NCBI RefSeq assembly: GCF_006345805.1
Contig: NC_043004.1
Coordinates: 27,714,001 to 27,778,000 of the forward strand
Origin: Octopus sinensis
Taxonomy: Eukaryota
Reading direction: 5' to 3'
Length of the DNA stretch: 64,000 nt
Below are positions 2,922-62,149 of this stretch, piece after piece; position 1 is the first letter of the stretch; every line of letters starts with the position of its first letter. The position numbers were made by a program, and so were the translations under genes. Below the pieces are notes generated by a model. That model had not been told where the DNA came from and did not search any database. It worked only from the letters and a program-made list of their open reading frames with translations.

Positions 2922-3044
2922 GATAATCACAGATACTATAAGTCGTTAATCATTCAAGAGGAACTCAATAAGCACTGGATAAACATGGATGATGGGCCAT
3001 TCAGTAACCACAGAGTTTTATCTAACAATCACAGAGTGGCTGCT
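2922..3044 (+). CDS. PLXDC2: PLXDC-like exon A (123 nt, phase 0-0)
   Basis: ttcctgttgcAG acceptor, GTAAGT donor; DNHRYYKSLIIQEELNKHWINMDDGPFSNHRVLSNNHRVAA resembles PLXDC DHNYY...LWVN...ILSNTHRQAA. Confidence 0.88.
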
Positions 3045-6000
3045 GTAAGTGTTATTTAAAGATCTCTTTGTTCTTTTACATTAAAAATCAAAATATATTA
3101 GGTGTTTCAGAAAGCCTTAAGCTTGTTTTCTTTCATGATATATGAAAGCTGTTGTATGGTTTTGGTTTAATTGTTTGAGTGTGTGTGTGTGTGTGTGTGT
3201 GATTAGGCTGAAATTTATATGTGTCAGTAAAGATTAATCAACTCAAATACTTTCTACCTGTAAAATACATAGTTAGACTTTGGTGTAATAAAGATGGTTT
3301 AGCATAGCTGTCAAATGAAGTGTTAGATATCTTAAGACCTGATCCCTTGTGTTACTTCAAGCATTTGGTTTTTCAATGTAGCTATTTCTATAATTTCGTA
3401 GACATTTGCAGTAATAGTTTTTAGTTAAATCTATTTTTTGTTTCCATTTATATTTCTTTTTTTCTATTCTGTTATTAGTTTGACAGCCAATATCTTGCGT
3501 GTCCTTAGAATTATGCATTAACAACTGTCTCCCCTTTTCACAGTGGATCCAAAACAATTTGCAAAATATATTAACAAGGCTTTATAGAATGTGAAACAAA
3601 GTTGTATTAAGTCTGACAATTTTAATTTGTTTAAATACCTTTTCTATAGATAGTTTTCATTTGATTTCTTTCTTCACCAGAAACATAATTCTTAGATTAA
3701 AATCAGGATAGTTTCTAATCTCTGGAATATAATGATTCCTTGAGTCATCGAGAAATTCCCCCTCTGATGGTCCTAGATTTACTTGAAACAGCTGCCAAAT
3801 CTCTCTCGTATCACTTTTTTTTTTTACTTAAAAAAAGATATCGTCTCACAGAATGATATAGGCTTAGATACACCATCAGCTAAAAAACAAAGAAATGGTC
3901 CTAGTTGGAATGCTTTGGCTGGCCATATATCTGTTGTTAACATTTTGCAAATATGTTCAGTACAAACGAAGATTTTATTTCCATATAGAATTGACACATT
4001 ATAGGTTTTAATTTTTGCGGTTTAGAATTGCTTTAGGTTCAGCTAGTTATCATTTTCTGAACATGTCTTATATTAGAGCAACTGCCTCACACAACACAAA
4101 ATATTTTAATCTGAAATTTATTTTCATTGGCTGAGAAAAATAAGTAAATTAAGAAAATCTCTCTCCAATTAATCTCATCTGCCTTAATGAAGAAAGAGCA
4201 TGTTTCATAATATGGTCTCTTCATATAGCCTTTCATTATGAGCAAGAATATACGTGAACTGTACTCTGTGTTCATTGACATTATCTCTCATTTACCTCTA
4301 CAAACATCAGTCTATCTAACTGACCTCTATTAATAATCTTCAAGTACTCTCTGGCCATTATTCTAGCTGACCTCTAATCTCTTACCCTGTCAATCTGTTA
4401 CTGACCCCCTACAAATAGTGTCTTGTTATAATTCTAAATGTAAGTTTAAGACCTGTGCAGAAATGCTGTTTAAAAGAAAATATTGTTTACAAATTATTTT
4501 AAGATTGTTGAGCTGTTAAATTTATAAACATGTTTTATAAAAATTTATATCTTTTCATTTCTCAGCCAGTGAAAATAAATTTCAAATTTAAATTTTTTGG
4601 ACATACTGTAGTGAATTTAACCATAGCTACTGGAGGTAAGTGAAGTTTTCTCTTACTGTTTTGTTATTATTTTACGATTCTAGACATCATATCTGCTGAT
4701 GACTTTTCATTGAATCAGTGACAGTCATAACTTCTTTGTACACATTCCTTTATGCATTTCCCCACACCCACTTTTGCTGGGTTTGGACTAGGAAATTTTT
4801 CTTTTAATGCAGTCATCAACATTCATGTCAGTTTGAAGGTGATCGCAAAATATATTGAGTAAATGATGGGAATAAGTGGTTGGTGTAGAAAATCTGAACT
4901 GAGAAATCTAGTTTATTCTATTATTTACAACTATTTTGGGTATATGTACATTCATATATGTTTGTGTGTTTGTGTTTATGTGTGTGCACACGTCTATGGT
5001 AGGTGTATGCAGTTGAATCAAAAGATACTTCATAACTCAAGTTACTCAGAAAAAGAAAATATTGTTTCAATGAAATCATGTTGATCTCACCGATAATTTT
5101 AAATCTATATATCATCAGCATATTTATTCATTCAGAAACCTCTTTAAACCCCCCTTGAAGCAGAACTCACTAGCCCTCTCAAGCTATCTCGACCCCAGGA
5201 CTTATTGTTTGTAAGTCTAGTACTTATTCTGTCGGTCTCTTTTGCCAACCTGCTAAGTTACGGGGACATAACACACAATCGACATCAATTGTCAAGCGAT
5301 GGTGGTGGGGGGAAAAACACAAATATATACATACATGCATATATATATATATATATGGTAGGCTTCTTTCAGTTTCTCTCTATCAAATCCAAATATTTTA
5401 TGATGGTTATTAAAAATATGTTTTTTTTTATCTTTCCACATTATCGTGTTATCTGCTTTATCATTTAAGATTATTAATTTACTTGATCTTAGTATTTCAC
5501 CCTATCGTATCATCTCATATTACCATTTACATTATAATATCATTTTGTATCATATTATCACTTTGTTTAAAAATTACTATATGGCTGTCTAATTTTATAC
5601 CTCTATATTATAATGCTATCAACTCATATAAATACTTTACCCTTGCTACTCATTGTTACATAACTGACATAAGATTCAATAATTATATAATGTTCATGAT
5701 AGATCTATAATTATTTCTCAGATAAGTACTATTATGAACCACATAAGTATATACTTCTCATCACTGACTCATAAAAGTAATCCTAAATATTAATGACTTG
5801 TAGGCACAAGGTATTTCGTTATGCAACCATAATATGCTACAAAGTATATTAAACATTTTTATAAGTCAATACCATGTACTACTGTGTTAGCAGTGCACTT
5901 AAATTACATGATATGTAGAGATGACCTTAACAGTAATTCTAAACTCTGTACAGATATATAGACCAGGAATCTGACGTCAATTTTGTACTCCTTTATTTTA

Positions 6001-9000
6001 ATGTAGTTAATTATGTTAAATTATTCTATGGAACCTGGTGCAGCCCTTGGCCTTACCAGTTCCTGTCAAGCCTTACCAGCATGGAAAATATATGTTAAGT
6101 GATGATGATGATGATATACCTATCAAATGCTGAAATATTGTAATCAAGGAATATATAGGTTTCACATTTTGGCACAAGGCCAGCAAGTTAGGTGCAGGAG
6201 TGGCTGTGTGGGAAGAAGCTTGCTAACCAGCCACATGGTTCCGGGTTCAGTCCCACTCATGGCATCTTTGGCAAGTGTCTTCTGCTATAGCCTCGGGCCG
6301 ACCAAAGCCTTGTGAGTGGATTTGGTAGACGGAAACTGAAAGAAGCCTGTCGTATACATGTGTATATATGTATGTGTGTGTATATGTTTGTGTGTGTATA
6401 TGTTTGTGTGTCTGTGTTTGTCCGTCTAGCATTGCTTGACAACCGATGCTGGTGTGTTTACGTCCCCGTCACTTAGCGGTTCGTCAAAAGAGACCGATAG
6501 AATAAGTACTGGGCTTACAAAGAATAAGTCCCGGGGTCGATTTGCTCGACTAAAGGCGGTGCTCCAGCATAGTCGCAGTCAAATGACTGAAACAAGTAAA
6601 AGAGTAAAAGAGAGAGAGAGAGAGAGGAGGGTAAGCAAACTACATCGACTCCAGTGTTCAGCTAGTAATTTATTGACTATGAAAAGATGAAAGGCAAAGT
6701 CAACCTTGGTGAAATTTGAACTTAGAACAGAAAGGCAGACAGAATGCTGCTAAGCATTTTGCCCGGCATGTTAACGATTCTGCTAGTTCACTGCCTTAAA
6801 TCATAGAATATATTAGCATCTTTGTGTCACTACGATCCACAGTATTTATTTAGTAAGTGACCTCAGTATAAATATTAGGTGTTTTTTTGTTGTTTTTATA
6901 TATATATATATATATATATATTCTAATTTGGTCTCTCTGACACACTTTCTGGGCCACCTTGACAGCAATATAACATTTTGACTGAAAAAAGAATTACATC
7001 ATTTGGATTTAGTTATAGACTCTAAAGTTCTTATTTCTTAGGAATATAGTTCTACATATATTTCTGGATAATAATAATCTCTTGTTGTTATGATTTTTGA
7101 CAGTTTATGTCAGGATAAATGTGTTCAATATTCTTTTGGTGGCTTTCTATATAAGTGTTTTAGTGTGACTGTGTGGAGAAATGCTGTTCTGCATCCTATA
7201 CCATTTAGTTACATAGAGATGGCTGTACTGTTATCAACTAAAGAAATGTGTGTATATGTATATGCATGTTTTCCTTGCTGGTATGGGTTGGACAAAGAAT
7301 TTTTTTTTCTCCATATGTATGTATGTATTTACACCTGCACACATGTATAAATATTTGTGTGTAAAATAAGCACAACGACTGTGAAACTTATATATATCTA
7401 CAATCTCTGTGTCTTTACCTATATATGTGTATATATATGTATGCATGGATACTAAAATAATGTATGTATGCTTGCATGTATGTGTGTGTGTATGTATGCA
7501 TGCATGCATGTTTGTGTATGCATGCATGCGTGTGTGTATGTTTGTATTCTATATATTCATGTGTTTGTGTGTTTTTATGTGTCTGCATGTGTGTGTGTAC
7601 CTCTGTCTCTTTGTGTGTGTGTATGGGGTCTTTTTGTAACTATGTACTGTGTCTGTATGTATGGATGTGTATCCCCACATGTGTGGATGTGTGTCTCCAT
7701 ATGTTTCCTTGTGTGAAGTGAGTTGTGTGTGTATATATATGGTCATGTGTTTCAGTCTCCATTTGCGTATGTGTGCTTCTCTGTTCATATAGCCTAAGAA
7801 CATATCCGTCTGTATGGCTATCTGTTTACATTCATATCCATATACCTACATACATGAGCATATACATATACACATATACAGATACTCACACATACATCTA
7901 TCTACATAACAACCCACTACCTATTTTACTCTACCTGTATAAACTGTGGGTATGGGGGTATGATATCTACTACGTATATTTCCTATTTTGTACTGGGGGT
8001 GTTTCATTTATGAGGACGTACTCCTGTATTTGTCTGAGTGTTGGGTCCTTTGGGTGCTTGGATAAAATGCTGATGTCAAGTTGACCCAGGTTGCCTCCAT
8101 GTTTGGTCCTTGGCATGTTGGTATAGTATGGAGGACTGTTTTTTGTCATCATATTGTCTCAAATGTTCATTTAGTCGTTCTGCAATACTCCTAGATGTCT
8201 CCCCTATGTATGTCATGTTCATGTCTTTACAAGCACCTTCTATGCATTTTATGCTGTAGACTACATTTCGAGTTCTACAGTTAAAGCTAGTTCTAATCCT
8301 ACATACCATGCAGTTATCATTGGTGCATATGGTATTCTCAAAGGGGTACGTCCTACACAGTTGTGATCTGACGGAGTTCCCTGGCCTTTCAACAATCTTA
8401 ATGTTGAGTTCGGTCTCCTTTGCAGCTTTCTTAAATCTACGAGCTAGTTCTCTATGGGCTGTGGCCTCTACAAACATCACTCCTTGATATTTGTTGGTTT
8501 TATATCACGTGTTCACCTTGTTTGCTTTGTCACAAGTTCTTGTTTCTATATCTAGGGCAGGTACCACTGGTATCATTACATATAATGTTATCTAACTTCT
8601 TTCTAGCACCCCTGTATACTCAAACCCTATCTTTTTTATCATATCCAGAGAATTGCTTATGGTGCATGAAGTTCTGTACCTTCGTTTCATAGGGTTTGCA
8701 TAGTGGGGACACATTGTTCATTATCCTAAGTCTGCTATCAATATATTAATTTTCATCTTGTGTGACAAAGCTGAGTTCTTGCGAACAACATATTTCGAAA
8801 CTAACTTTTATCTTTACTAAATTAACCTTTGAGACTCACAATTTGCTTCCATGTTAGAAACTCCTCTTCCTCATGCTTTGTTGAGATCATCAACATGTTT
8901 GATTTGTTATGGACAGCTAGCCATGAACTCTCATAAACAGAAGTGGACTGAGGAATATTAAATTCCTTGTTGGATCTGTTGATGAATCACTTTTCTGATA

Positions 9001-10629: not shown

Positions 10630-13600
10630 CAGAAAGTAAAGGAGAGAAGACTTCTTAATTGTTTGTTTAAATTGATTCACTGTGTTAGATGTAGAAAATG
10701 TGATACCCAGTGTTGAGTGGAATTATTCCAGACTATGGTTTTGATGATTAATAAGGCTAAAATGTTTACTCACTCTATGCAGTGTACTGCACTTAACGCA
10801 ATAATTCAACTGGTGATAAGTGCTTTATATGAGTTTATTTACTTGTCTTCCTTTATATATATATATATATATATACACACACATATATATTATTAAGCTA
10901 TGTTCTGTTTGTGTTGGTCTTGTTATTAAATGTCCTTCTTGTCAAGCTATCATTTCATCTGAGATTTATACAAAACTATTCAAAGGAGTTAATTAACTCC
11001 TTTGAAATTGTTCTCAAGTCTTTACATCTTTCTGAAGTTGCTTAAAGGGCCATTTTGGTCGACTGAAACTAGTTCATAGAAATAAATACATTCAAAGTGG
11101 TTAGAATGGCTGGTTGAAACTGGTTTGTAACAATTTTTTTTCTTATACTGGAGATAGTGGCTGAGTGGAAATGGTTTGTAGACGTTTTTTTCCTGGTGTT
11201 TAGTGGCTGGTTGAAACTAATTTATGATAGTTTTTTTTAAGAGTAATGGGCAGATGAAACTAATTTATATCAGTATTTAATTTGTTTTCACACACACCAT
11301 ATACATAATGTTTTCCTATATATATATATGTGAGTGTGTGTGTGTATTCATTTGCCAATGACTCCTCATTCAGTTTCTCTATCTTTCTTTCATCTCCCTC
11401 TATTTCTTCCTCTTTCTCTTCTCTCTTTTCTCTTCATCCACTAAATTTATCACTGTATTGATATATTTACTTTTATAGGTTTTCTTTACATGAGTCCATT
11501 TTTACACAAATGGCTAACAGCAACACAGTACATTGCACCTCTCATGGCAAACTTTGATACCTCCATTGGTAAAGGTTCAGAAATAAGAATCCTCGATACT
11601 GGTAAGCTTTCTTTTTTATTTTATTTTTTATTTTCAGAATTAAAATTATTTTTTATTCAAATATCAATAGGAGTAGACCAGAAAGTCAAATTGCTTCTGA
11701 AATAGATTTCTGTTCTTTCACATTTGCCAGTTTTCAATATTAACTATAGATATCCTAATTATCTATTTGAAGGAAGCTTCTACAAGCTAATAAAGGAAAT
11801 AATCTATATATTCAGTAATTTTCCTCTAAATTCTTTTGTTACTGATATCTAAGTATATACATTATGTCTATGATGAGGAACATTTATCTAAAGATAAATG
11901 TATTTTAACATAAGGTATAACTCCCTGGAAAAGTTACCTTGTATGTAGACAAGACTCTTTGATTGTTCAGCTACTAACTCTCTATGATAAGAAATAACAA
12001 AAAAAGAAAAGAAAAGCACATTCCATGAATTTCTTCCAGACTGTAATTGTTTTCCATCTAAGAGAACGTCTTGCTTCATAAAATGTTCAATATATCTCAG
12101 GTTATGTCATGCTAGCAATTTCTAAAAAGAATGAAATAGTACTGTACATTATTACTGCTGACTAGAAAATTTAAGCACTCCATAATAAATAAACAAAAAT
12201 CAAATAAAAGAAAAATATATAATGCATCTCTTTTCTTATTCTTTAATTTCAAATTCAAAATTTCTAATCCCACCAGACATGAAGAAATGATTATCTCCCT
12301 AGCAGACAGTTATTACAATAACAACGTGCTTTCATCTGCTTGTTACATAGTGTGTTGGCTAAAATGTATTAGGACTACATGTTTGTTCATTATTTTTAAG
12401 ACAGTCTAATTTGAGAAAGATTTGGCTTCTATATTTGGAAACTCATGTGACTTTAAATGTTCTCTTGTAGACTTGTGAATTCAATGTTGATTCATTGATA
12501 ATGAAGTTCAAAATTGATTTCTCAATTTCTCAGTTAAACCCAAAGCTGGAAATCTAATTCAGAGTCTTTAAAATAAAGACAGGAGTCTGATGACATGAGG
12601 TCAAACCTTAGTCATTCTGTTGTACTCCTGGACAAGATACAAGAAAACTGTTGTGTTTTGGGATCAAATATGTTTGATCTTTCTCTATGGTAACAGTCAC
12701 AGTGTTTGGTAGTTGTCAGTTGCAGGGCAGGGATCAAACTGTAGAAACATTTACTCCAACTATGTGACTACATTTACTAAAGAATAGAAAAAATGGTTGT
12801 TGTTACATTGAGACTCTCCTTTTTAAAATCTGTTGGACAGACAACAACTGCTACATCAAATAGTTCTTGTCATGGTTCAGCTCTGATCCAGACATGGCCA
12901 TCGTTTCTTTTGACTCAGTGTATTTAAGATTATATACCCAAAATGTCCCTTTTCTTTGGAGAGAGAGAGAATTGTCTACTATTTTGAACAAGTTAGCTGA
13001 CCTGTAGAGGATCTCTCATTGTTTCATACTTCATGTTTGAAAGGTTGTCAATAAGAAAGGTGTCCAGCTTTGAAACAATTGGCTTTAATATGTAAAGGGC
13101 CAAAATTATCAACTAGCCACTAGTATGGAAGAAACGGATAGCTAAAGCAACCAACTCTGTTTAAATCATTCAAAATATTTGCCTTAGACGTATTTAAATT
13201 TTTTTTTATAAAAACAACAGCAGCAAATTAACCAATTAGGATTTTAAATTAACAACCATAATGAATTTTTGTGATAAAGTTAATGTGTAGGATTTAGTCA
13301 CCTATACCATTATCATTGATTTATTAGCAACAATTTGTAAATTTTCTCCACTAATTAGCAACATTGTATAAATCTTCAAAAGTTAGCCCTGATTTATTAG
13401 CAACACTGTTCAAATCTTCACGTGTCACAGCAGTTTTGTATTGTATATTGAACTTGTCCCTTATTTCATGATTTGGTTTATTCAACTGAAATATTAGATA
13501 AATATGTATATTAGGTGTAGGCATAGGAGTGGCTGTGTGGTAACTAGCTTGCTTACCAACCACATGGTTCCAGGTTCAGTCTCACTGTGTGGCACCTTGG

Positions 13601-22600: not shown

Positions 22601-25600
22601 TTTCCAATATTTTGTTACTTTTTCAGAAAACATGTTTGTAGTTCATTGGAAAAATGTTCATCTCCACGATCAGAAGTCATCGAAAGGTGAGGATGAATTT
22701 TCATTTTGTTTTTCTTTTTAAATATACCCATGAAATATGTCACAAAGAATATAATCTTTTAGAGCGAGACAAAATTGTAACTTTAATTTATTCATGTAAA
22801 GCTTTAGTGTAATTATGACCCATATATATTTTCTTTGTCACAATATTTATCTATCACTTCAACATTTAAATTTAATTTGTCAAAATATTTTCGTTGCTTT
22901 GAGACCATGACCTGTTCACTGACAAAGCTTCGTACTGCATCTCCTGAGATGCACCTTCCACGCTGCAATTGTTTTCGTTCCAACACACGATCTCAGATCA
23001 AGTCACTTGCTATGCAAGTACATCTCTGTAATATCTAAATACTCTGTCAGAAAAGAGTCTTATTTGGTTAGTGTTTCTTACAATCACAAGTAATTTCCAT
23101 TTATGAAGAGAGGAAATAGTTCTATTGTTGCCATTAAATGAAATGTCTTACATTGTTAAAATCTTAATGGCAGTAAACCAAAAAGAGGTCTGCAAAGACT
23201 GCTCTTATAAAGAATGCATTTGTATTACCTCTGAACTTCAAAACATTTTGGATTTAAAGAAATTATTTTCATACACAGATTAGATCTGTGTATGAGCTGG
23301 TGCCATGTAAAAAGCACTCAGTCCACTATGTAGGGTGGTTGGTGTAAAAACCATGTCAAAACAGACACAAAAGCCTGGTGTCGTCTGATGCCTGGCTGGC
23401 TCCTGTCAAACTGTCCAACCCATGCCAGTATGGAAGGCAGGCATTAAACGATGATGATGATGAACTCGTGTGTGGAATTTTGTAGAGTGAGAAATTTTAC
23501 ACATCTATTAGTAATAAAGTAATATGATGTTAATTCAGGTGCTTTATAAAAATAAAAAATCTCCAGATGCTAGTGTAGTCATAGCTGTGTGCTTAAGAAG
23601 CTTACTTTGTTATCCTATAGATTTTAGTTCAATCATACAGGCCAGCACTTTGGGAAAATGTCTTTTACTATAACTCTGGGCCAACCAGTGCCCTGTGAGT
23701 GAATTTGGTAAGCAGAAACACTGTGGAAGCCTGTTGTGAATACATATGTATGTACATGCATACGAACATACAAACAAACAAATTAGGATAATATAACACA
23801 AAGATAGAGGATAACAGGCTTTAATAGTTGATCACATTTGCTTGTCACTGCACACCAACTTTAGTTGGTGTTTATATTTATATACCATTATAGAAGATTA
23901 TTTTTTATAATTACTGTATAGTTGAATGCTGCTCAGCAACAGCCATGTGTGGGTACTTCATCAAGGCAGAATATAATTGATTCCTATTGGATTTTTCTGG
24001 GTACATGTGTGTCTTTGTATATGTCCCTTCCTACTATTGCTTGACTACTGGTGTTGGTTTGTTTATGTCCTCATAACTTAGCAGTTTAGCAAAAGAGACT
24101 GATAGAATAAATACCAGATTGTAAAAAGCTATAAGTACTGGAGTCGATTTGGTTGACTACACCATTCAAGGTTGTGCCCCAGCATGGTCACAGTACACTG
24201 ACTGAGAAAGTAAGAAAAATGTTACACTTCATCTTTATTTATTGGAATTAAAATGAAGTTATTTCAACACCTTACAAATTCCAATGCATACTTAAAGAAC
24301 CATTTTCTATAGATCAGTTAGCATGGTGTAGTAATCAAGCTGAAAATAAAGGCTCCACATTATAATATTATAATATTAACTAGCTGATATGTTTAAGACA
24401 TTTAGAAGGCTAACTGTTGATGATAGTACTTAGACATTCTAAATTATGTTAGTAAATCCTCCTTTATTATGGTGTCTGCCCTTAAGAAAACTTAAGGCTC
24501 CCGTTCAGTGGCCTAAAAATGTAAGGTGTCTTTGAATAGCCTAACTGAGATGGGATGACATTTACTAACAAACATTTGGTTACCATCAATGTTCCCTAAT
24601 ATATCAATGACCTATAAACTTGTCTTCCAATCATTTCACATTTGCATGCTGATGTTAATAACTTTTAGGCAATGTCTTAAGCCAAAAATTACTTTGAAGT
24701 GACTTCAAATTGAGTGGACCCTATCACTTATGAAGTTTGATTTCATTTTATGCAAAATCTTAAAACATCTTGAAATACTATAACATTACAAAAATATATG
24801 GATCTTTTCGGTTTGACCGGCAGTTTTTTAAAATAATTTCCACATAACTAAACACTTTTAAACTTCGTATACTGGTAGAATGTGTTTATAAAACATCTTT
24901 TTCTCTTAGCTTTATTGAGAAAATTCTATAGTTTGTAAGATATTTGTTGTTTTTTTTTTCTTCAATTTCTGCAATTTCAACCAATCAATGAAAGGTGAAA
25001 ACATTCTGTGCCGTATGAATATGTCCCTCGTTTAAGAAACAGATTGGGTTTATTTACATTTCTGAAGAAAAAAAAAGATACCCTTCCTCCCCACCCCTAA
25101 CACTAACCCTAACTAACCCAAGCCCTAAAGCAGATTGAAATGCAATAGATCGATACTAGGGTCATAATTATGGGTGACAATTTCATATGACACCGCTAGA
25201 AAAAACGGCCGTTCAAACCGAAAAGATCCAAATTTACTCTTATATAACATTATTAAGTAATTAAGATGCACAACTTAAATATTCCCTCCTGATATAAATC
25301 TCTTATACAAGGAATACAGCTGAACAACTGAATAGTGTCAGAAAGTTTCTGTTTATACTGTACTGTTTATTTTCAATCAATGCATTCATATAAATGTTGT
25401 ATTACAGTTCTTGTGAGTTAACTATTTTAAGGCTTGAGTCTGTTGCTAGTGATGCAGCCATATTGAAGTTTATGAAGCATAAAATAGATAGCACAGGGCT
25501 ACATTAAATGTACTTTTTTTCTTTTGTGTTTCTAAATATATATTGTAGATTTAAATGACAAGGATTGATAAAGTGCTGACAACAGGAATTTTGTTTTCTC

Positions 25601-27358
25601 TTTACAGATGATTCCTTTAATTTCCAAGTGATTTTACTGAAAAATGGCACAATAAAATTTGTATATAAAAAGGTGATCATTCAAAGTTTGTTTGTACAGT
25701 TAAATTTTAATTTAGAATTCATTATCATAGTTTTGTGTGTTAATTAAGCCAGCAATATAGGAAGATTTTACAGTTGAAGACAACCATGGATAAGTATGGT
25801 ATATCTAAATAATAGTCTTGCTGTAAAAATTGGTTGGTGTTAAGAACCAAATTAATGAGAGAGACACAGAGAAAGCTGGAGATTTAAGACCCTTAGATTA
25901 CTTCATTTAATCACTGATAAATCAATACATCTTGGAACAAAAATGATTACAAGGCCATATTGTGAATTATTTATTTCTTTAGGGGTTAATCAGAGGAGGA
26001 GGAGGAGGTGTAGTCATAAAGGCTTCCGAATTGAATGGAGGAAATAATCCTGAGCTTGCAATTGAGTGAACTTTGCTACAGGCACATCCACTCAAGGACC
26101 AGCTGGTGGTCATGTTAAACTGGGCAACAAATTAAATTCACGACTGATATAGTCGTTAACTTGGATTTCAAATTTAAGCAGTCCTCATAGCTGTACTAAA
26201 TATATTTATAAAGAAAATCCCTTACACTGCATTGTTAGTGATAAACTTTTATTTAAGATACATGATACTGTTTTCCCTTATCGTTTTACAAGAAATCAAT
26301 TTAATTTCTACTTCCAGTTACCAATATCTCCTTATTTTATCAGTTCACAAAACCATCCTGTAAAAATAGGATTGTCCGATGCATATTACATTGACAAAAA
26401 GGGTGACAGTGGTAAGTTTACATTCATGTCAATTATCTAATATTTATTTTGCATGAGAGTCATGATAAATGGAGTGAGTTCACTGTTCTTCATCAAATGC
26501 ATCAATTAATAGATAACTTCAGAAGAATACTTCTGTCAGGCTTTGAGTATCAACTAACCGTTCATCATATACATAGTAATAGTAGTAGTTGTAGGAGGAG
26601 GAGGAAGCTACATTGTCACTATGTATCTGTGTGAAATATAGTTCTTCTGAGTGTAAATATTGTGAGCAGTGAGGTGGATGGAACTGCATAAGATGTACAG
26701 GGTGTCCACAAAGTCTGGGTACATGGGGATTAACAATACTTTAAGAAATTATTATTTCTTATGTTTAATTGTTTATGTTATGATTTTATTTACTCCATGT
26801 ACCCAGACTTTGTGGACACCCTGTATAACCTAATTCTATATAAAAATTATTTTTTACCTTTTGATCACAAACAATTTGTGTTTTAGAGCACCTTAGTTAG
26901 ATATGTACAGGTCAAACAATTCAAGAGCACAATTTTGTTTAACTTTGGTCTCATAGCATTGGTTCTGTTAGACTCCTGTATGCTGTGCCTGTTCAACATC
27001 CCAATAATGTGAACCTAGTTGCTCCTCTTGCTAGTGTTCATTTGAAGGTGTTAAAGCTAATAATGTAATAAGTTTAAAATTGAAAGTGAAATACTGCAGA
27101 AAAGGCATTGTAATGAGTCCTGAACTGAAAAAAAGTTTAGACAAACAAGACATTAGAGATTACAGGTTCTCAATCATAAACTTTACAAAACTAGAATCTA
27201 AAATTATCCTCTCTTAAAACTGTGGGCTTGTTCATGTAGCTGAGTAAGCAATACCTGTGATGTTCTGTGTAAATGTTTATAGATAACATTGTTTGCCTGT
27301 CCACTACACAGCAAAACATAAATATACAGTGGTGATGTGTGTGCGCTCACACACACAA

Positions 27359-27397
<39 letters not shown>

Positions 27398-30300
27398 ATG
27401 GAGTATTTGAGGACATATTGGGTAATATAATAAAACAACTCTAATCTAGCAAAAACCAAATGTATGTTTATAGCAATTTGTGTACATGTTCTCAGTAAGC
27501 TTTCTTATAAGAATTATTTTATCAGTCTGCCACTGGCTTCAATGACTGCTTTGATGCAAGACTGGAATTGGTGACATGCCTGTTCTAAATGGTCTTCATT
27601 CATTTCAAAGTCACCTGAAGAACAGCTTCAGTGAAGCTATGGTCTTGTAGGGATGTCGATTAGTCTCCCTTTCAACAATGCTCCAAACATTTTAGTCCAT
27701 GGGATTTGAATCCAGTAAGTTTGGAGGACACAAGTTTCATGTTACATGATCATAAAGATTGTCTAACTTCTATTCAGGGGTTACATGGACTTGGTGGGAA
27801 AGTGCTGAGCTCTGTTGAAACACATATGGCCTTCCACTGCATACTTCATCCATCCAGGATTTAACAACTGTCTCCAGCACCTCATTGTATCCAGCAGCAT
27901 TAATTCTAAGAAGTTGTGGAGGGATGTGAGTTGGCATGAAATGACTTTAATTATTCACTATTCCTAAAAAAAACAATCATAGTTACTAGCAACTTAGTGT
28001 GCATCACTCTGGAAACATTTGTAATTTCCCCTGTTAGACTTTTGATCTTGATCAAACTTTTATTCCTCAAAGAGGAACCAAAGCAGGTCAGGTTTGTGAA
28101 GATTTTTAACCTTGTTCAGTAATCACTTGATATAGATCAGATAGTTTGCCTGTGTCATTACAGACATGAAGTGGCCTCCCCTCAGTACATGTGACTTGTT
28201 TTCAATGCCCTCATGCACAGCAGTTCTCATAATCTACTGCATCACCAGAAGATCTTTATTGATTACCCTTATTGATTTTCTAGGATCATCATCAATAATG
28301 TTTTGAGCCTTTTGGATGAATTGCAGTGTCCCTATTGTGTCCAAACGTTTAGAATCTTATTTTTGTCTTTAATACAGCTGTATTGTTCTTGCTGGAAGCT
28401 TCCTTTTTCATCCAAACTATGTATAGAACAAAGATCTTGCCACATTTAGAAAGTTGGCAATTTATAAACTGCTTTGTTTCACACTCATGTGGCAACAATG
28501 GGTGCATGTCTTTTCATTTCCTGTGTTAGCATTTTATCTGCCATGAAGGATCTGAAAGAAATAAAAGCTTTGTAATTGGTTTGAAGAGAGTAATATACTG
28601 ATAATTAGGTTTCCTCAAGTACCCTTTGCACTCTGTATATTTGAGAGAGACTAGATTATACAGATCTCATAAAAATTTGATTGACTTAGATGAACTGAGG
28701 CAGCACATTCTTAGTTCATCATAATTAGTTATTTAATCATTGAGGGCATACAGTGATTCAGCAGGTAATCTCACAAGCATGCTTGTGTGTGTAAATATTC
28801 TCATTTCATATCCCTTTTCTATGGTGGTAAATTTGGATGAGCCATAACAATACAAGTTCACTCTTATCCAGAGTTATTGCTCTCACAGTTGGTTCAGGAG
28901 TCCATGTCTTGTTTGTAATTGATAAATTTGGTCAACTGGATGTCCATCCTATCATGTTCACTTTAAAAGACATTTACCCAAAGTGTCATACAGTAGAATT
29001 GAACCTAGAACCATATGGTTTTGGAACAGACTTCTTAATCCCCATGAAATAGATAGCACTAATATAATATGAGCAGTGATTCCCTTCTGTTATGAAGATA
29101 CAAGAAATACATCCAATATCTTTTTATCTTATGAATATGTTCAAATAATTGTTTAATCATAAAATCTGTACTCTTCTGACATTTTATGTGGATACAGACA
29201 TGAATTTTAACACTTTCCTTGCCATATTTTTAATTAAATATGTGTTTCACTTAATTGTGAAGATAACCAGGCATTTGGAGGGGTTTAGTAAACTAGCTAT
29301 TTCATTTTTTTTAACAGAAGATTGTCCCATAAAATGAGAATGAATGATTTTATTTTAGATAAGAAGAGAAAAGTTTTGGATCAGAATTAGGAGTGGATTA
29401 ATTTAGAATGCTCTTATGGAGCTACAGCTTAATATGAAGCTGGGGGTGAGAGATTTATATTTTTTAGCATGTATTGGCAGCTAAGTATTAGTAAAATTTA
29501 AAAACTTTTTGTTATTTTCATATTCTTTTAGGTATTGTCCGAATAATTTATGAATACCACAGAGTTACAATTGATAAGGCAAAAATAAGACAAAGAACCG
29601 TTGTGATACTTACTCCACTCCCAAGTAAGTCTGTTAACTTTTACTTTATTTGTTTTGGCTTTTTGTAATTATTGTCTCATTTTAGCAAACTTGATTCGTT
29701 TCCTTTACATTTGTATGTCACCTTTGTGTCTGTAAAGTGTATCTTGAAACCACTCTGAAGAAAATTCTCATTGTGTTGGTGTGAAACTTAGTTACCTTTG
29801 GGTTGGTGATGGAAGTTGTTTTACTAATTCTTTCCTCTGGGCATTGGTGATGCAAGAATTTGAAATCCATCCATATTGAGATTATCACATTAGATTGAAT
29901 TAAGTAATGGCTTACAGCACTAAAGGCTCTTCTAACCTGTGTTAGAAGTGAATCCTATGATAAATATAACGATGGACTAAGTTATTGATATAGCAATTTA
30001 GTCAAGATCCAATAGTAATCATGACTTATACCCTTAGGAAACATACTTAGTTCTTGCATAATTTAGTATTTCATCTCTTTTCTTTTTACTATTCAATTAA
30101 TCCTGTTGATGGAAGTTTCATCACTTGGTCCAAAGTCACCTCTCACAATACTACTTTGCCTGTCCTGTAGAGGGATCTTATCTGGCAAGTTATACTTGGT
30201 GATATCACAGCTGCTGGTGCCACAGAAAAATCACCCAGTACAAATTGTAAAGTGGTTGGCATTAGGGAGGGCATCCAGCCATAGAGACCATGCCCGTGCA

Positions 30301-32397
30301 GACAGCATAGCTTGGCACAGTTTTCTGACTTGCCAGCTGCTGTCACACCATCCAACCCATACCAGCATGATAGAAAGACATTTAATGATGATAATGATTA
30401 ATTCTTTACTTGACAAGCAATCACATAATTAATTTCATTGGCAATCACACAGTATAGAACATAATGTATTAGGTATTTTTTACTATTCTTTATTCCTCCT
30501 TTCAGGATTGTTTATTTATTTGTTTCTTTGTTTTGTTGAAACACGTTTTGAGAGTACATGATGAAGAAAAGAGACTATTGTAATTTTGAACCTTCTTATC
30601 ATATGTTAACAACTACCATGTACTATCTTGTATATAGAACCATATTTAGCCTTGTTAGGATGGTGTAACATTAAAAGCACGACATAATGCCAATAACCGA
30701 GACCTCTAGCATTATGTCATTCTTCAGAAGACCCATCAAACTGAGCAAAATGGCAGATGTGGCTGATACTGGAGTCACGCAAATGGCACCTATTCCAGTG
30801 GCATGTAAAAGCACCCATTACACTCTCTGAGTGGTTGACATTAGGAAGGGCATCTAGCCATAGAAAACCATGCCAAATCAGACTGGAGAATGGTGCAGCT
30901 TTCCAGCTTACTAGCCCTGGTCAAACTGTCCAACCCATACCAGCATGAACAACGGACGTTAAATGATGATATTGATAATGATATAAAATATATTGAATCA
31001 TTGTAAAAAAAAAAATGGCATAATCATAGCTGGAATATCCTTATCTTAGGCCTGCTGATCCGGGGCTTACCTGAGATTATCAGCAACAGTAACTGTCTAT
31101 TGTAAGGGCGCAGTAATGATATTTAAATTGCTGTTGTTTGGTTCCAGGATAAGCCTCAATGAGTAGACTTTTGATCAAAATACCCCACCATTGACTTTCC
31201 TATCTTTCTTATAGATATTTTAAACTATATTATCTAATGTACCTGATCCTTACGTAAGACAGCAGGGTGTGATTTACAACTCCATTGGGACTTCCCTGTT
31301 GGGATTAATTGTTTTTCATTGATATTTTTCAGGTAGTGCCTATAAACTTCAGCTGTCAAGGGGATCAACGATGGGAGAGACATTGTTCACGTCCCACTTG
31401 TTTTTAATGATACAAGTGGTACAGAATGATATGTCCATAGCTAGGAATTGAAACCATGCCCTATTCTTGATGATTTTGATGGGATAGCACCTTAGTGGCC
31501 CTTACTAATATTACTGGAATTCTTGCTCTGGTCCTTGGGTGGAATTGAGTGTGGCACTACAACGTGATGTTGGGTAGTGTTCCTCAATAGTGTCTCATTA
31601 CCGTTGGACGGTTCAAGATTTTGAGAGTGATGTACCTTTTTATTAACACACTGATCTGTGCAAGATGATAATATAAAGTTTTGATCCTTCAACCAAAATG
31701 GTCACTTATTAACTTGGTCATTTGTGATTCTCACTGTAACATATCTTTAATACACACTGTAGTACACAAGTTCACATCACTTGTCTCTAAGTCTGCAGTG
31801 ATAGCTCAGTCATGGGAACCACCATTAATACATTAAAAGTTCTTAGTTTATCTGATGAGATTTGATCTCAAAACATAAAGCAGTGATAGTACTGGGAATT
31901 CTTTAGTCTGATTAGCAACCAGCTTTGGTCATTCACTCTGTAAGAAATAGCAGTCAAATCTTTCCTCAGACTACTATCTTGAGACAAAAATACATTGAAT
32001 AATATAGTCTTACTTGCACTATACTTGTAAGTAATAACTGGAATAACTTTGATTATAAGCCTGCTCAAGCCTGGGCTAAACAACAACTAATGTGAATATA
32101 TATAGACAGATTGAATTAATGAAATGTATGAAGCCCATTGTTAATGATATTTCTACAAAATAATTGATATGTATTTGTTTCTTGTTAGCCATTAATTATT
32201 ATCCTAGTAATTTTTTATTTATTGGTTAATATTTTTTTTTTCTTCTTTGCCTAGCCTGTAACCTTGCTGAAGATTGCCAAACATGTTTCACTCAGAAAAG
32301 CAACTTTTCCTGTAGATGGTGTTCAACTTTGCAACGGTGTTCCAATGGTATAGACTGGCACAGACAGTCATGGATTGCAAATAACTGTAATAGTGTT
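2922..32397 (+). CDS. PLXDC2: Plexin domain-containing protein (PLXDC1/PLXDC2-like), 8 internal exons, partial at both ends
   Basis: Exons 2922-3044, 4566-4635, 11479-11601, 22627-22686, 25608-25672, 26318-26411, 29532-29624, 32255-32397 all have GT-AG flanks and compatible phases; total 771 nt = 257 codons with no stop. Motifs LTATQYIAPLMANFD, NHPVKIGLSDA, IYEYHRV, LTPLPTC and the PSI cysteine pattern match PLXDC as I recall it. An invertebrate gene is probably co-orthologous to PLXDC1 and PLXDC2. Confidence 0.93.
4566..4635 (+). CDS. PLXDC2: PLXDC-like exon B (70 nt, phase 0-1)
   Basis: tttctcAG acceptor, GTAAGT donor; PVKINFKFKFFGHTVVNLTIATG(G) matches the RVNLSFDFPFYGH...ITVATGG pattern. 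Confidence 0.92.
5110..5390 (-). mobile_element. Octopus-type tRNA-derived SINE (second family), 5'-truncated
   Basis: Reverse complement of the 6191-6625 family (gaccccaggacttattg...ggcttctttcagttt). Confidence 0.75.
6191..6625 (+). mobile_element. Full-length tRNA-derived SINE with internal (TA/TG)n tract and (GA)n tail
   Basis: Head GGAGTGGCTGTGTGG...GGTTCCGGGTTCAGTCCC (A/B-box-like), body ccaaagccttgtgagtggatttggtagacggaaactgaaagaagc, 3' end gtcaaatgactgaaacaagtaaaagag; closely related to 13521-13905. Confidence 0.85.
6900..7900. repeat. Compound (TA)n/(TG)n/(CATG)-rich microsatellite region
   Basis: Visible dinucleotide and mixed runs at 6896-6921 and about 7230-7900; the ORFs here are low-complexity artefacts. 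Confidence 0.8.
7960..9400 (-). mobile_element. Penelope-like retroelement remnant (GIY-YIG endonuclease plus decayed RT)
   Basis: ORF 8076-8480(-) CRTRNVVYSIKC...YIGETSRSIAERLNEH is a GIY-YIG motif; the C-terminal ILSKHPKDPTLRQIQEYVLI continues in another frame (7970-8152). Upstream reading is broken by stops. Confidence 0.82.
9480..9665 (-). mobile_element. Partial copy of the piggyBac-type MITE seen at 38561-38781
   Basis: gccagatccagccagtttgaacataaaacaggtagaata is the reverse complement of that element's interior. Confidence 0.6.
11107..11275. repeat. Degenerate minisatellite, about 4 units of 45-50 bp
   Basis: Recurring tggctggttgaaact(g/a)(g/a)ttt...ttttttt motif. Confidence 0.55.
11479..11601 (+). 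CDS. PLXDC2: PLXDC-like exon C (123 nt, phase 1-1)
   Basis: ttttatAG acceptor, GTAAGC donor; (G)FLYMSPFLHKWLTATQYIAPLMANFDTSIGKGSEIRILDT, containing the hallmark LTATQYIAPLMANFD. Confidence 0.95.
13521..13905 (+). mobile_element. Full-length tRNA-derived SINE (same family as 6191-6625)
   Basis: Same head, body and tail motifs with internal (TG)n. Confidence 0.85.
14750..15240 (-). mobile_element. CR1/L2-like LINE RT 3' fragment, decayed
   Basis: Minus-strand NLVIHIDSQMKF (cf. DLGVxIDxxLxF) and SEYGNIIWRPHL (cf. LEYxxxVWSPHL). Confidence 0.5.
15665..17300 (-). mobile_element. HERO-like (R2/NeSL group) non-LTR retrotransposon remnant with restriction-like endonuclease
   Basis: Minus-strand KCGRKWKAQETVKEVETYWKHQEIVG, ALGEGQYKWRHDKVL and TDMFLLSKNTKTIIAVELTAPREGR...EVGC match the RLE-type C-terminal motifs (WRHD, PD..E..P, EVG); frameshifted. 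Confidence 0.72.
17745..18265 (+). mobile_element. Gypsy LTR retrotransposon 3' fragment (integrase C-terminus, PPT, start of 3' LTR)
   Basis: PYNGPYQVI..GDKTFQL...QDTVSIDRMKPAH in ORF 17656-17952; purine tract ctggtgggggag at 18061-18072 followed by TGTAGGG at 18076. The LTR right end is approximate. Confidence 0.72.
21276..21961 (-). mobile_element. Internally deleted mariner (DD34D-like) element
   Basis: Minus-strand KNWMFHDDNALCHQAL (mariner HDNA motif); imperfect TIRs caaggtggtatcagtaagttcctggact at left and caaggtgatatc------ctggact (reverse complement) at right. Confidence 0.68.
22438..22592 (+). mobile_element. SINE/LINE 3' tail family ending in (GAT)n
   Basis: ggcgttaggaagggcatccagc...ccaacccatgctagcatggagaacggacgttaaac(gat)n; related copies near 6040-6115, 23300-23462, 30255-30390, 30800-30980 and inverted near 34740-34900, 40490-40700, 44340-44440. 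Confidence 0.7.
22627..22686 (+). CDS. PLXDC2: PLXDC-like exon D (60 nt, phase 1-1)
   Basis: ttttcAG acceptor, GTGAGG donor; (E)NMFVVHWKNVHLHDQKSSK matches the LVVQWDHVHLQD pattern. Confidence 0.9.
24800..25229. mobile_element. 430-bp MITE with 17-bp perfect (about 30-bp imperfect) TIRs
   Basis: GGATCTTTTCGGTTTGA at 24800 and its exact reverse complement ending at 25229; no clear TSD. Confidence 0.78.
25608..25672 (+). CDS. PLXDC2: PLXDC-like exon E (65 nt, phase 1-0)
   Basis: ttctctttacAG acceptor, GTGATC donor; (D)DSFNFQVILLKNGTIKFVYKK matches the [20 protein letters not shown] pattern. Confidence 0.88.
26318..26411 (+). CDS. PLXDC2: PLXDC-like exon F (94 nt, phase 0-1)
   Basis: cttccAG acceptor, GTAAGT donor; LPISPYFISSQNHPVKIGLSDAYYIDKKGDS(G). 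Confidence 0.93.
26698..26823. mobile_element. 126-bp Tc1/mariner-type MITE
   Basis: Perfect 29-bp TIRs CAGGGTGTCCACAAAGTCTGGGTACATGG / reverse complement, with TA on both sides (26696-97, 26824-25). Confidence 0.9.
27530..28560 (-). mobile_element. Decayed maT (DD37D-like) mariner transposase remnant
   Basis: Minus-strand AAGYNEVLETVVKSWMDEVCSGRPYVFQQSSA...CPPNLLDSNPMD*NVWSIVERE; several stops. Confidence 0.68.
29532..29624 (+). CDS. PLXDC2: PLXDC-like exon G (93 nt, phase 1-1)
   Basis: ttcttttAG acceptor, GTAAGT donor; (G)IVRIIYEYHRVTIDKAKIRQRTVVILTPLP. Confidence 0.92.
32255..32397 (+). CDS. PLXDC2: PLXDC-like exon H, PSI domain (143 nt, phase 1-0)
   Basis: tctttgcctAG acceptor, GTAAGT donor; (T)CNLAEDCQTCFTQKSNFSCRWCSTLQRCSNGIDWHRQSWIANNCNSV has the C..CxxC..CxWC..C..W..C PSI pattern. 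Confidence 0.94.
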
Positions 32398-33697: not shown

Positions 33698-34146
33698 TTT
33701 CATTTTCCAACAAATTGTCTGGCAACAGGACTCTGCACCATGCCACACAAGCAGGAGAACCCAATCATGGCTGTCAGACAATTTTTGTGACCATATCACC
33801 CCTAACATCTGGCCACCTAACTCCCCAAACTGCAACCCCCTTGATTATTATGTGTGGGGTGCAGTTGAGTGAGAGCCCCAAAAAACGCTTTGTAATACCA
33901 AAGATGAACTGATTATGGCAGCATTCACCAACTTAAACAAGGAGACCTTCCAGAAGAGTTGCAGGAGATTCCGAAGTCGTCTGGAGACTGTGTTTGAAGC
34001 CAATGGCGATTTTATTGAATAAATTTACTCTTTAGTATTTCGAGATAATTTTTATGTAATTTTGGTAAATATATCTGTTAAAATGAGATGTCAGTGTTAT
34101 TTTCAATTTTGCATAATTTAGATGACAATATATTCATCGTACCCTG
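33698..34146 (+). mobile_element. maT/mariner 3' fragment ending at a TIR-like end plus TA
   Basis: WQQDSAPCHTSRRTQSWL...WPPNSPNCNPLDYYVWGAVE (ORF 33639-33872); ends ...catcgtaccctg|TA. Confidence 0.8.
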
Positions 34147-46107: not shown

Positions 46108-46335
46108 AACCTGTGTCAGTCTTGTGTGTAAAATAGCCAGGAACTGAGCAACTTGATTATTATTATTCTGATCTGATTATATTTTTTATATATTAGTGTG
46201 TCTAGTGATGAGTGGATGTATATGTATGTGCCAGCTACTTCTACTGTGTGTGGGTGTGTGTTAGACGTGATAAAATTTAGCAAATCTTTTCATTTAGCTA
46301 TCGTTAAAATCATATATATATATATATATATTTGT

Positions 46336-46549
46336 CACCTAAATGTGGCTAACCCTTAAGGGTTGATGCTACTGTAGCTTGTAGCCCCAGGAAGACTTCT
46401 CCTCCAGCTGGCTGTTGACACACTTTCTGTGCCCTATCAGTATTTGCAAAGGGCACAGATAGTGTGTCAATAGCCAGCTGGAGGAGATGTCTTCCTGGAG
46501 CTACAAGCCACAGTAGCATCAACCCTTAAGGGTTAGCCCCATTTAGGTG
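46336..46549. mobile_element. Foldback MITE: 100-bp arms, 94/100 complementary, 14-nt loop
   Basis: 46336-46435 versus the reverse complement of 46450-46549 shows 6 mismatches and no gaps; left flank is (TA)n. Confidence 0.88.
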
Positions 46550-46669
46550 GAAAATATACTTTACGATGTTGTGCAGCTATTGTTTATACCTTGCTCAGAG
46601 ATTTATTATTACTTGTTTCCACTTTTTTGAGATCAGTGACTTTTCCTCGCTGGAAAAAGTATATATATA

Positions 46670-55272: not shown

Positions 55273-55563
55273 TGCCAAATAAAGACATGCATTATATATT
55301 CGTTCTTCACTCATTTATTATTGTTCTTATTTTATCTTACACTCTTTGTCTGGAAATCTTTCATCACACATCTGTGACCACTTCAGTGGCCTTTTCCATC
55401 CAGAGTGGACTAAGTGGAGCAGGAAGATACATGTGGATGAAAAGGGTTACTGAAGAGGTCACAAATATGTGATGAAAGATTTCCAGACAATGGACATGAG
55501 ATAAAACAAGAACAATAACAAATGAGAGAAAAGCAAATATATAGTGCATGTGTTTATATGGCA
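55273..55563. repeat. Ungapped inverted repeat, 130-bp arms (108/130), 31-nt loop
   Basis: 55273-55402 versus the reverse complement of 55434-55563; also visible as two ORFs on opposite strands sharing MHYIF...LEIFHH. Confidence 0.9.
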
Positions 55564-61534: not shown

Positions 61535-61605
61535 AATATTAGGGAGTATATCCAAACTTACAGGGAAAAATTAGATATAGGATTAAATCAAATTTCACAG
61601 TATAA

Positions 61606-62101: not shown

Positions 62102-62149
62102 TATATATATGTATGTATGTATGTATGTATATGTATTTGTATATGGATG

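What the first reader, a model, noticed from the sequence alone, without database searches (positions are those of the whole stretch)
4097..4599. Intronic inverted copy of exon B plus its acceptor: candidate ADAR editing-complementary sequence (K-to-R recoding at 4585)
Seen: 4097-4138 is the reverse complement of 4558-4599 at 38/42 positions with no gaps, about 420 nt upstream in the same pre-mRNA. The four non-identities give one G:U wobble (G4569), two U:U and one A:C mismatch (A4585 opposite C4111). A4585 is the middle base of the AAA Lys codon 4584-4586, so A-to-I would read AGA (Arg). The duplex also buries the acceptor AG (4564-65) and other A-rich codons (K, I, N, K). Established: ADARs prefer A opposite C in dsRNA, exon/intron ECS duplexes drive recoding (e.g. 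GRIA2 Q/R), and coleoid cephalopods recode extensively. Inference: this is a functional editing and/or splice-control stem; skipping this 70-nt exon would frameshift. I found no comparable match for any other exon.
Basis: partly seen in the sequence, partly recalled or inferred. Interest (0 to 1): 0.85.

Follow-up and report, generated by a model that had tools for sequence, protein, structure and literature searches.

The report
Inverted copy of an octopus exon junction
An octopus plexin-domain gene has a 42-base backwards copy of one exon's start in the intron just upstream, which should fold the unspliced RNA into a strong stem that RNA-editing enzymes could act on. The copy is young, drifts like ordinary intron DNA, and no RNA data could be reached to show editing.

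Summary
Shuffled sequence never exceeds 31/42.

The window is Octopus sinensis. The gene is a PLXDC1/2 (plexin domain-containing) orthologue, and 4566-4635 is a genuine 70-nt coding exon. The stem is predicted with pair probability about 1.0 for a 27-bp core (duplex about -43 kcal/mol). It covers the acceptor AG.

O. bimaculoides keeps the arm (39/42). It carries a genomic G (AGA, Arg) exactly where O. sinensis has A4585 opposite C4111. That is the pattern often seen at edited sites. It is also what one ordinary exon substitution after the duplication would produce.

Evidence against a selected function:
- The arm is no better conserved than the surrounding intron (90.5% against 89.5%).
- All four arm changes since the species split break base pairs.
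- Argonauta has no copy.
- K/R is conservative at a variable residue.
- No transcript evidence was reachable.

Best reading: a young, locally generated inverted micro-duplication, probably from template switching. It creates a plausible but probably incidental ADAR substrate. Functional K-to-R recoding or splice control is unproven.

The parts
4097..4138 (+). Intronic arm: a reverse-complement copy of the last 8 nt of intron A-B plus the first 34 nt of exon B
   Evidence: Unique in the 2.7-Gb genome. Present in O. bimaculoides at L002 41993-42034.
4139..4557 (+). 419-nt loop between the arms. It holds the likely branch-point region and most of the polypyrimidine tract
   Evidence: An indel around 4400-4449 makes the loop 468 nt in O. 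bimaculoides.
4558..4599 (+). Exon-side arm: TTTCTCAG (the end of the pyrimidine tract plus acceptor AG 4564-65), then codons 1-11 and the first base of codon 12 of exon B
4112..4138 (+). 5' strand of the uninterrupted 27-bp core helix. It pairs with 4558-4584 and includes one G:U at 4127/4569
   Evidence: Pair probabilities 0.95-1.00 over 4112-4136, falling to 0.93 and 0.73 at the last two pairs, when the whole intron is folded. The helix is present in both the MFE and the centroid structure.
4585..4585 (+). A opposite C4111, the middle base of Lys codon 7 (AAA). A-to-I here would read Arg. O. bimaculoides has a genomic G at this position
4111..4111 (+). C in the intronic arm opposite A4585. 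It is C in both Octopus species
4566..4635 (+). Exon B (70 nt) of the PLXDC1/2 orthologue. It encodes PVKINFKFKFFGHTVVNLTIATG plus the first base of a Gly codon that exon C completes. This is the start of the weakly matching nidogen-like region
2922..3044 (+). Exon A, the upstream exon. Intron A-B is 3045-4565
11479..11601 (+). Exon C, the downstream exon

Best explanation
A 42-nt stretch spanning the 3' splice site and the first 34 nt of exon B of the Octopus PLXDC1/2-like gene was copied in reverse-complement orientation into the same intron, about 420 nt upstream.

**Origin and age.** The copy arose in the Octopus lineage after its split from Argonauta and shortly before O. sinensis and O. 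bimaculoides diverged. The most likely mechanism is a short replication template-switch event. This step is inferred.

**Evolution since.** The intronic copy has drifted at the neutral intron rate. This step is shown.

**Structure.** In the pre-mRNA the two copies are predicted to form a very stable stem with a 27-bp perfect core, flanked by an A:C mismatch and two U:U mismatches. The stem encloses the acceptor AG. This step is computed.

**Likely consequence.** Such a duplex is a competent ADAR substrate. In ADAR-rich octopus neural tissue it is likely to be edited at several exon adenosines: K3, I4, N5, K7, K9 and possibly the acceptor A4564. This step is inferred and not shown.

**The A:C mismatch.** The simplest account of A4585 opposite C4111 is ordinary divergence between the two copies. 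There are two equally parsimonious routes:
- exon G>A in the O. sinensis lineage; or
- arm T>C before the species split, followed by exon A>G in O. bimaculoides.

Any editing is therefore most likely a by-product of the duplication, not a selected recoding or splicing device.
For: **The repeat is real.** It has sharp ends and lies far beyond chance. The arm is single-copy in the genome, so it is not a transposon family. It is present in an independent assembly of a second species, so it is not an assembly artefact.

**The exon is the ancestral copy.** It is conserved in Argonauta, decapodiforms and other molluscs. The Argonauta 72-kb locus has no inverted copy; its best match is 12 nt.

**The arm drifts neutrally.**
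- Arm identity between O. sinensis and O. bimaculoides is 38/42. The intron as a whole is 1361/1521 (89.5%).
- 70% of 42-nt intron windows are at least as conserved as the arm.
- The four arm differences are all lineage-specific and each breaks a pair. One shared C>T leaves a G:U wobble.
- Exon B is no more conserved than the other exons.

**The stem is stable.**
- The MFE and centroid structures both contain it, with z = -3.3.
- Pair probability is about 1.0 for the core.
- Duplex energy is -42.6 kcal/mol in O. sinensis and -47.9 kcal/mol in O. bimaculoides.

**Editing is possible in principle.** ADAR-type deaminase domains are present in the genome.

**The mechanism has precedent.** Template switching is a documented source of new hairpins (PMC8794818, PMC10710096).
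Against: - The comparison rests on two Octopus lineages and 42 positions, so purifying selection on the arm cannot be excluded statistically.
- The only exon-B difference between the species falls exactly at the A:C position. There O. bimaculoides has G paired with C. This A/G interchange is the pattern reported for edited sites (PMC8382921). Under one of the two equally parsimonious histories it is a compensatory U:A > C:A > C:G series.
- A stem that buries an acceptor has been tolerated in both lineages without being destroyed. Weak selection is one possible reason.
Confidence: 0.6

Rival explanations
1. Selected editing-complementary sequence. On this view the arm exists to present A4585 opposite C to ADAR, so that a regulated fraction of PLXDC-like protein carries Arg in place of Lys at residue 7 of exon B.
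For: - The A:C mismatch sits directly next to a 27-bp helix.
- The arm and C4111 are retained in two species.
- O. bimaculoides encodes Arg (AGA) at this codon in its genome. Arg is therefore tolerated, and the A/G interchange typical of edited sites is present (PMC8382921).
Against: - The arm is conserved only at background level, with no compensatory change since the species split.
- The arm is absent from Argonauta.
- The residue is variable across animals: K, N or R in the aligned sequences.
- K>R is conservative.
- A near-perfect A/U-rich 42-bp duplex predicts promiscuous editing, not site-selective editing.
- No RNA evidence was found.
Confidence: 0.15
2. Splice-control stem. On this view the helix sequesters the acceptor AG and the last 8 nt of the pyrimidine tract. 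That would slow or reduce inclusion of exon B. Skipping shifts the frame and would lead to decay of the mRNA, so the stem would tune expression. Editing of A4564 could also abolish the acceptor.
For: - AG 4564-65 and 4558-4563 lie within pairs of probability 0.73-1.0.
- The exon is 70 nt, so skipping it shifts the frame.
- A4564 is in a C-A-G context with the 3' G that ADAR favours.
Against: - Every annotated isoform in O. vulgaris, O. sinensis and O. bimaculoides contains exon B. The only annotated skip removes exons E+F in frame.
- The arm drifts neutrally.
- There are no data on exon inclusion.
Confidence: 0.1
3. Inert relic. The duplication is real, but in vivo the stem is prevented or unwound by co-transcriptional spliceosome assembly, helicases or low expression. 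It would then be neither edited nor relevant to splicing.
For: - The arm evolves neutrally.
- No octopus transcript of this gene turned up among 5.8 billion clustered proteins that include run assemblies. This is compatible with low expression.
Against: - The upstream arm is already transcribed when the acceptor emerges.
- The predicted duplex is very stable.
- Octopus neural tissue edits extensively (PMC8382921, PMC9989829).
Confidence: 0.15

Closest known systems
Exon-intron editing-complementary-sequence duplexes of ADAR targets (mammalian GRIA2 Q/R and R/G sites, Drosophila intronic ECSs). From established knowledge.
   Same: An intronic sequence pairs with exon sequence of the same pre-mRNA to form a duplex longer than 20 bp. 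The candidate adenosine lies opposite C. Editing would have to precede splicing.
   Different: - The classical ECSs are conserved well above the intron background, and their editing has been demonstrated.
- Here the arm is upstream, not downstream, and it is young.
- It drifts neutrally, and no editing has been shown.
ADAR2 (ADARB1) self-editing at a 3' splice site. From established knowledge.
   Same: The duplex involves a 3' splice-site region, so editing and acceptor choice are physically coupled.
   Different: In ADAR2, editing creates an acceptor (AA to AI). Here editing of A4564 would destroy the normal acceptor. No alternative product is known.
Hairpins created by short replication template switches (PMC8794818, PMC10710096)
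   Same: A reverse-complement copy of nearby sequence appears in one step, with sharp ends and no transposon features. This creates a long, perfect stem de novo.
   Different: - The described cases are mostly short-loop hairpins in rRNA and new miRNA genes.
- Here the loop is 419 nt and the copied template is a splice junction plus coding sequence.
- The ancestral, copy-free intron could not be aligned, so the event itself was not reconstructed.
Cephalopod recoding sites and their A/G interchange between species: the harm-permitting or restorative model against the adaptive model (PMC8382921)
   Same: The candidate A in one species is a genomic G in a sister species.
   Different: - Editing at this site is not documented.
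- Across coleoids the ancestral codon is AAA, so Arg is not clearly the ancestral residue.
- The direction of change within Octopus is unresolved.

Membership tests
ADAR exon-intron ECS duplex | Intramolecular duplex of at least about 20 bp between the target exon and intron sequence of the same pre-mRNA | tested here: met
   42 nt at 38/42 with a 27-bp uninterrupted core. Pair probability is about 1.0 with the whole intron folded.
ADAR exon-intron ECS duplex | A-to-G difference between RNA and genomic DNA at the target adenosine | not testable with these tools
   No octopus transcript-derived sequences of this gene were found. The stored part of the O. bimaculoides recoding table has no plexin-domain row, but the file is cut.
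ADAR exon-intron ECS duplex | ADAR enzymes encoded by the organism | tested here: met
   17 exon-level matches to PF02137 (A_deamin) at several loci of G000. Which of them are ADAR and which ADAT/ADAD was not resolved.
ADAR exon-intron ECS duplex | For functional ECSs: the complementary arm is conserved above the intron background, or pairing is kept through compensatory change | tested here: not met
   Arm 38/42 (90.5%) against intron 89.5%. 70% of 42-nt intron windows are at least as conserved. All four changes since the species split break pairs. The one possible compensatory series, 4111/4585, is ambiguous.
ADAR exon-intron ECS duplex | Favourable local context of the target (A opposite C, suitable neighbouring bases) | tested here: met
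   A4585 lies opposite C4111 with 5' A and 3' A. The 3' neighbour is not the preferred G.
Template-switch-derived inverted repeat | Reverse-complement copy of nearby sequence on the same strand, with sharp ends | tested here: met
   The copy lies 419 nt away, and complementarity stops abruptly at both ends.
Template-switch-derived inverted repeat | Not a member of a dispersed repeat or transposon family | tested here: met
   The only genome-wide match of 4040-4200 is the region itself. The tool warns that repeat counts are lower bounds.
Template-switch-derived inverted repeat | An outgroup shows the pre-event sequence at the orthologous spot | tested here: inconclusive
   Argonauta has no inverted copy in its 72-kb locus. 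Its intron does not align with the Octopus intron, so the pre-event state is not seen.
Splice-site-sequestering stem | Splice-site nucleotides are base-paired in a stable helix | tested here: met
   AG 4564-65 and 4558-4563 are paired with probability 0.73-1.0.
Splice-site-sequestering stem | Altered exon inclusion that depends on the stem | not testable with these tools
   All annotated isoforms include exon B. No junction counts are available.

The most novel reading that the evidence does not exclude
This may be a datable birth of a cephalopod recoding site. One template-switch event would have turned a splice junction into its own editing-complementary sequence in the Octopus ancestor. The resulting duplex would then make A/G interchange at codon 7 nearly neutral: edited A in O. 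sinensis and O. vulgaris, hard-wired G in O. bimaculoides. That would be a concrete mechanism by which coleoid genomes acquire editing sites and then trade them against genomic G.
Probability: 0.2. Interest if true: 0.6.

Novelty: new member of a known kind. Interest (0 to 1): 0.4.

Why it matters
Coleoid cephalopods recode tens of thousands of sites, yet how the required double-stranded structures arise is poorly documented. Most work has been transcriptome-based and has pointed to exon-internal structure.

A clean, unique exon/intron inverted duplication gives a simple, testable case of how an ADAR substrate can appear in one mutational step. Its age is bracketed by three genomes, and the sister species has a genomic G at the mismatch.

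If the site is edited, the locus could help separate the harm-permitting, hard-wiring and adaptive views at a single well-defined site. If it is not edited, the locus shows that a 42-bp stem over an acceptor can be tolerated for millions of years.

Tried and rejected
**Chance match.** Rejected by shuffles.

**Transposon or MITE arm.** Rejected, because the arm is single-copy in the genome.

**Assembly artefact.** Rejected, because the same inverted repeat is in the independent O. bimaculoides assembly.

**Apparent second copy of exons A and B, 10 kb upstream in O. bimaculoides.** This was my own error. The file L002.fa holds both the L002 and L003 records, and those hits are the Argonauta exons.

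**Restorative editing of codon 9.** Codon 9 is K in Octopus and R in Argonauta, decapodiforms and other molluscs. I considered that the stem had permitted this change.

**Transcript evidence.**
- Three protein searches at different query lengths found no octopus RNA-derived fragments.
- The decapodiform run assemblies show no variation in exon B.

**Published site tables.**
- Liscovitch-Brauer 2017 is not held.
- A search aimed at Birk 2023 found nothing relevant.
- The stored part of Table S5 of PMC9989829 has no plexin-domain entry, and the file is cut.

**O. vulgaris DNA.** Not obtainable. For one product the gene range was too long, and the other product is not on record.

**Rfam.** No known RNA family in the window.

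Full report
**1. The observation**

The inverted repeat is there exactly as described.
- The repeat finder gives arms 4097-4138 and 4558-4599, 42 nt, 90% complementary, 419 nt apart.
- A base-by-base check finds four non-Watson-Crick positions: T4102/T4594, T4107/T4589, C4111/A4585 and the wobble T4127/G4569. Complementarity stops abruptly at both ends.
- In twelve dinucleotide-preserving shuffles that kept local composition, the best inverted 42-mer within 2 kb reached only 28-31 matches. The match is homology, not chance.
- Inverted repeats as such are common in this window. About eight other structures reach at least 38/42, mostly 50-133 nt and repeat-like.
- This is the only one that involves an exon. 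No other exon has an inverted match longer than 14 nt.

**2. Where we are**

The window is G000:C8:27714001-27778000 of a 2.72-Gb assembly in 13,516 contigs. Contig C8 has the same length, 107,269,306 bases, as the contig carrying an Octopus sinensis RefSeq protein that the window encodes at 100% identity.

The plus strand carries a plexin domain-containing protein 1/2 (PLXDC1/2) orthologue. Eight exons with canonical splice sites lie in the window:

| Exon | Coordinates |
|---|---|
| A | 2922-3044 |
| B | 4566-4635 |
| C | 11479-11601 |
| D | 22627-22686 |
| E | 25608-25672 |
| F | 26318-26411 |
| G | 29532-29624 |
| H | 32255-32397 |

One search corrects the end of exon H from my first model.

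Exon B encodes PVKINFKFKFFGHTVVNLTIATG(G). This is the conserved F-x-F-x-F-[FY]-G-H ...

**3. The structure**

- Folding 4060-4660 puts the long-range stem in both the MFE and the centroid structure (z = -3.3).
- With the whole intron included (1.66-1.78 kb), the pairs 4112-4136 have probability 0.95-1.00 and the last two pairs (4137, 4138) 0.93 and 0.73. The outer segments have 0.26-0.78, apart from the outermost pair at 0.08.
- The isolated duplex is -42.6 kcal/mol. The O. bimaculoides version is -47.9 kcal/mol.
- The helix contains the acceptor AG (A4564:U4132, G4565:C4131) and the last six pyrimidine-tract bases.
- Fifteen adenosines on the exon-side arm lie in the stem. Editing them would give K3E/R, I4V/M, N5D/S, K7E/R and K9E/R, plus silent changes at P1, K3, K7 and K9, and loss of the acceptor at A4564.
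- Only A4585 is opposite C.
- The genome has several loci with ADAR-type deaminase domains.

**4. Comparative evidence**

*O. bimaculoides (locus L002).* Intron A-B aligns over its whole length.
- The arm is present (L002 41993-42034) and pairs with its exon at 39/42.
- Arm identity between the species is 38/42 (90.5%). The intron overall is 89.5%, and 70% of 42-nt intron windows are at least as conserved as the arm.
- I used the exon copy to polarise the changes in the arm:

| Lineage | Arm change | Effect on pairing |
|---|---|---|
| O. sinensis | 4102 (A>T) | breaks a pair |
| O. sinensis | 4107 (A>T) | breaks a pair |
| O. bimaculoides | position equivalent to 4101 (A>C) | breaks a pair |
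| O. bimaculoides | position equivalent to 4126 (A>T) | breaks a pair |
| Shared, before the split | 4127 (C>T) | leaves a G:U wobble |

- This is the pattern of neutral decay, at about the background rate.
- It dates the duplication to not long before the two species diverged.
- Exon B (69/70 identical) is not unusually conserved compared with the other exons. Exon E is 65/65 and exon H 130/132.

*Argonauta hians (locus L003).*
- Exon B is conserved (33867-33938).
- There is no inverted copy anywhere in the 72-kb locus; the best minus-strand match is 12 nt.
- The intron is not alignable with the Octopus intron.

The arm is therefore an innovation of the Octopus lineage, derived from the exon and not the reverse.

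**5. The A:C position**

The single exon-B difference between the two Octopus species is 4585. O. sinensis (and the O. vulgaris protein) has AAA, Lys. O. bimaculoides has a genomic AGA, Arg. The arm has C in both species. Argonauta and two decapodiform transcripts have AAA.

Two histories need two steps each:
- (a) The exon was AAA at the time of the duplication. The arm changed T>C before the split, and the exon then changed A>G in O. bimaculoides.
- (b) The exon had become AGA before the duplication, so the arm's C is a faithful record. The exon then changed G>A in the O. sinensis/vulgaris lineage.

Both fit the A/G interchange known at edited sites, as discussed in PMC8382921. Both also fit plain K/R toggling at a tolerant residue, since this position is K, N or R across animals. 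The mismatch therefore does not need to be designed. It is what one substitution in either copy produces. An additional Octopodidae outgroup would decide between the two histories.

Codon 9 is K in Octopus and R everywhere else. It is AAA in the arm copy too, so that change predates the stem.

**6. Evidence for editing itself**

None could be reached.
- Three protein searches tuned to full-length, mid-length and short spliced fragments returned only genome-derived Octopus proteins.
- Decapodiform run assemblies are invariant in exon B.
- The stored, truncated recoding table for O. bimaculoides in PMC9989829 has no plexin-domain entry.
- The main cephalopod editing-site papers could not be reached. 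Liscovitch-Brauer 2017 is not held, and a keyword search aimed at Birk 2023 found nothing relevant.

**7. Interpretation**

The best-supported account is a young, local inverted micro-duplication, of the kind short replication template switches produce (PMC8794818, PMC10710096). It happened to copy a splice junction plus coding sequence. It thereby created, in one step, a strong exon/intron duplex.

That duplex is a credible ADAR substrate. Because it is long, nearly perfect and A/U-rich, I expect several sites edited at modest levels and not one selective site. This is inference.

Nothing in the comparative data shows that selection maintains the arm. The claims of functional K-to-R recoding or splice control remain hypotheses with modest probability.

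**8. Comparison with known systems**

- It works like the classical exon/intron ECS duplexes such as GRIA2 and the Drosophila targets.
- Because it covers a 3' splice site, it also recalls ADAR2 self-editing.
- It fails the conservation hallmark of functional ECSs, and the defining RNA-DNA difference is untested.
- Its likely origin matches template-switch hairpins, although the pre-event sequence could not be seen.

**9. Verdict**

- As a candidate it is a new member of a known kind.
- Interest is moderate. It would rise if RNA-seq showed editing, because the locus would then document the birth of a cephalopod editing site and its A/G trade-off between sister species.

Noticed in passing
window 8076-8504 (- strand), in intron B-C: A 142-aa open frame with a GIY-YIG nuclease domain (PF01541, E = 6.8e-5, just above the cut-off). 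It looks like a remnant of a Penelope-like or other GIY-YIG mobile element inside the intron.
   Followed up: partly
window 4286-4376: Three copies of a 15-nt motif (TCTAACTGACCTCTA and variants), spaced 29 and 47 nt apart, inside the loop between the two arms. Its significance is unknown.
   Followed up: no
window 46327-46558, 55273-55563, 59110-59750, 61598-62108: Long near-perfect inverted repeats with arms of 47-133 nt at 83-98% complementarity. Some have loops of only 14-31 nt. They look like foldback or MITE-like elements. No PLXDC exon was found beyond 32397, so they may or may not lie in the same transcript. If transcribed they would form much longer dsRNA than the exon B stem.
   Followed up: no
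window 5189-5391 and 6317-6540: An inverted pair of repeat units (83 nt at 87% and 75 nt at 81%) flanked by TG/CA-rich microsatellite, in intron B-C. This is probably two copies of a dispersed element in opposite orientation.
   Followed up: no
window 25608-25672 and 26318-26411 (exons E and F): One annotated O. vulgaris isoform (P0004) lacks exactly exons E+F, which together are 159 nt and in frame. This looks like annotated alternative splicing of the nidogen-like region.
   Followed up: no
L004-L007 (decapodiform transcript assemblies); proteins P0005 and P0125-P0128: Members of one transcript cluster differ at the last residue...ESEA against ...ESET. Thr to Ala is an ACN>GCN change, i.e. 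A-to-G. It could be an editing site or a polymorphism in the decapodiform orthologue.
   Followed up: no
window 4590-4592: Codon 9 of exon B is AAA (Lys) in Octopus. It is Arg (AGG or CGG) in Argonauta and the two decapodiform transcripts, and Arg in the bivalve and gastropod proteins aligned. A4591 is A:U-paired in the stem, so editing would restore the widespread Arg. However, the Lys predates the stem.
   Followed up: yes
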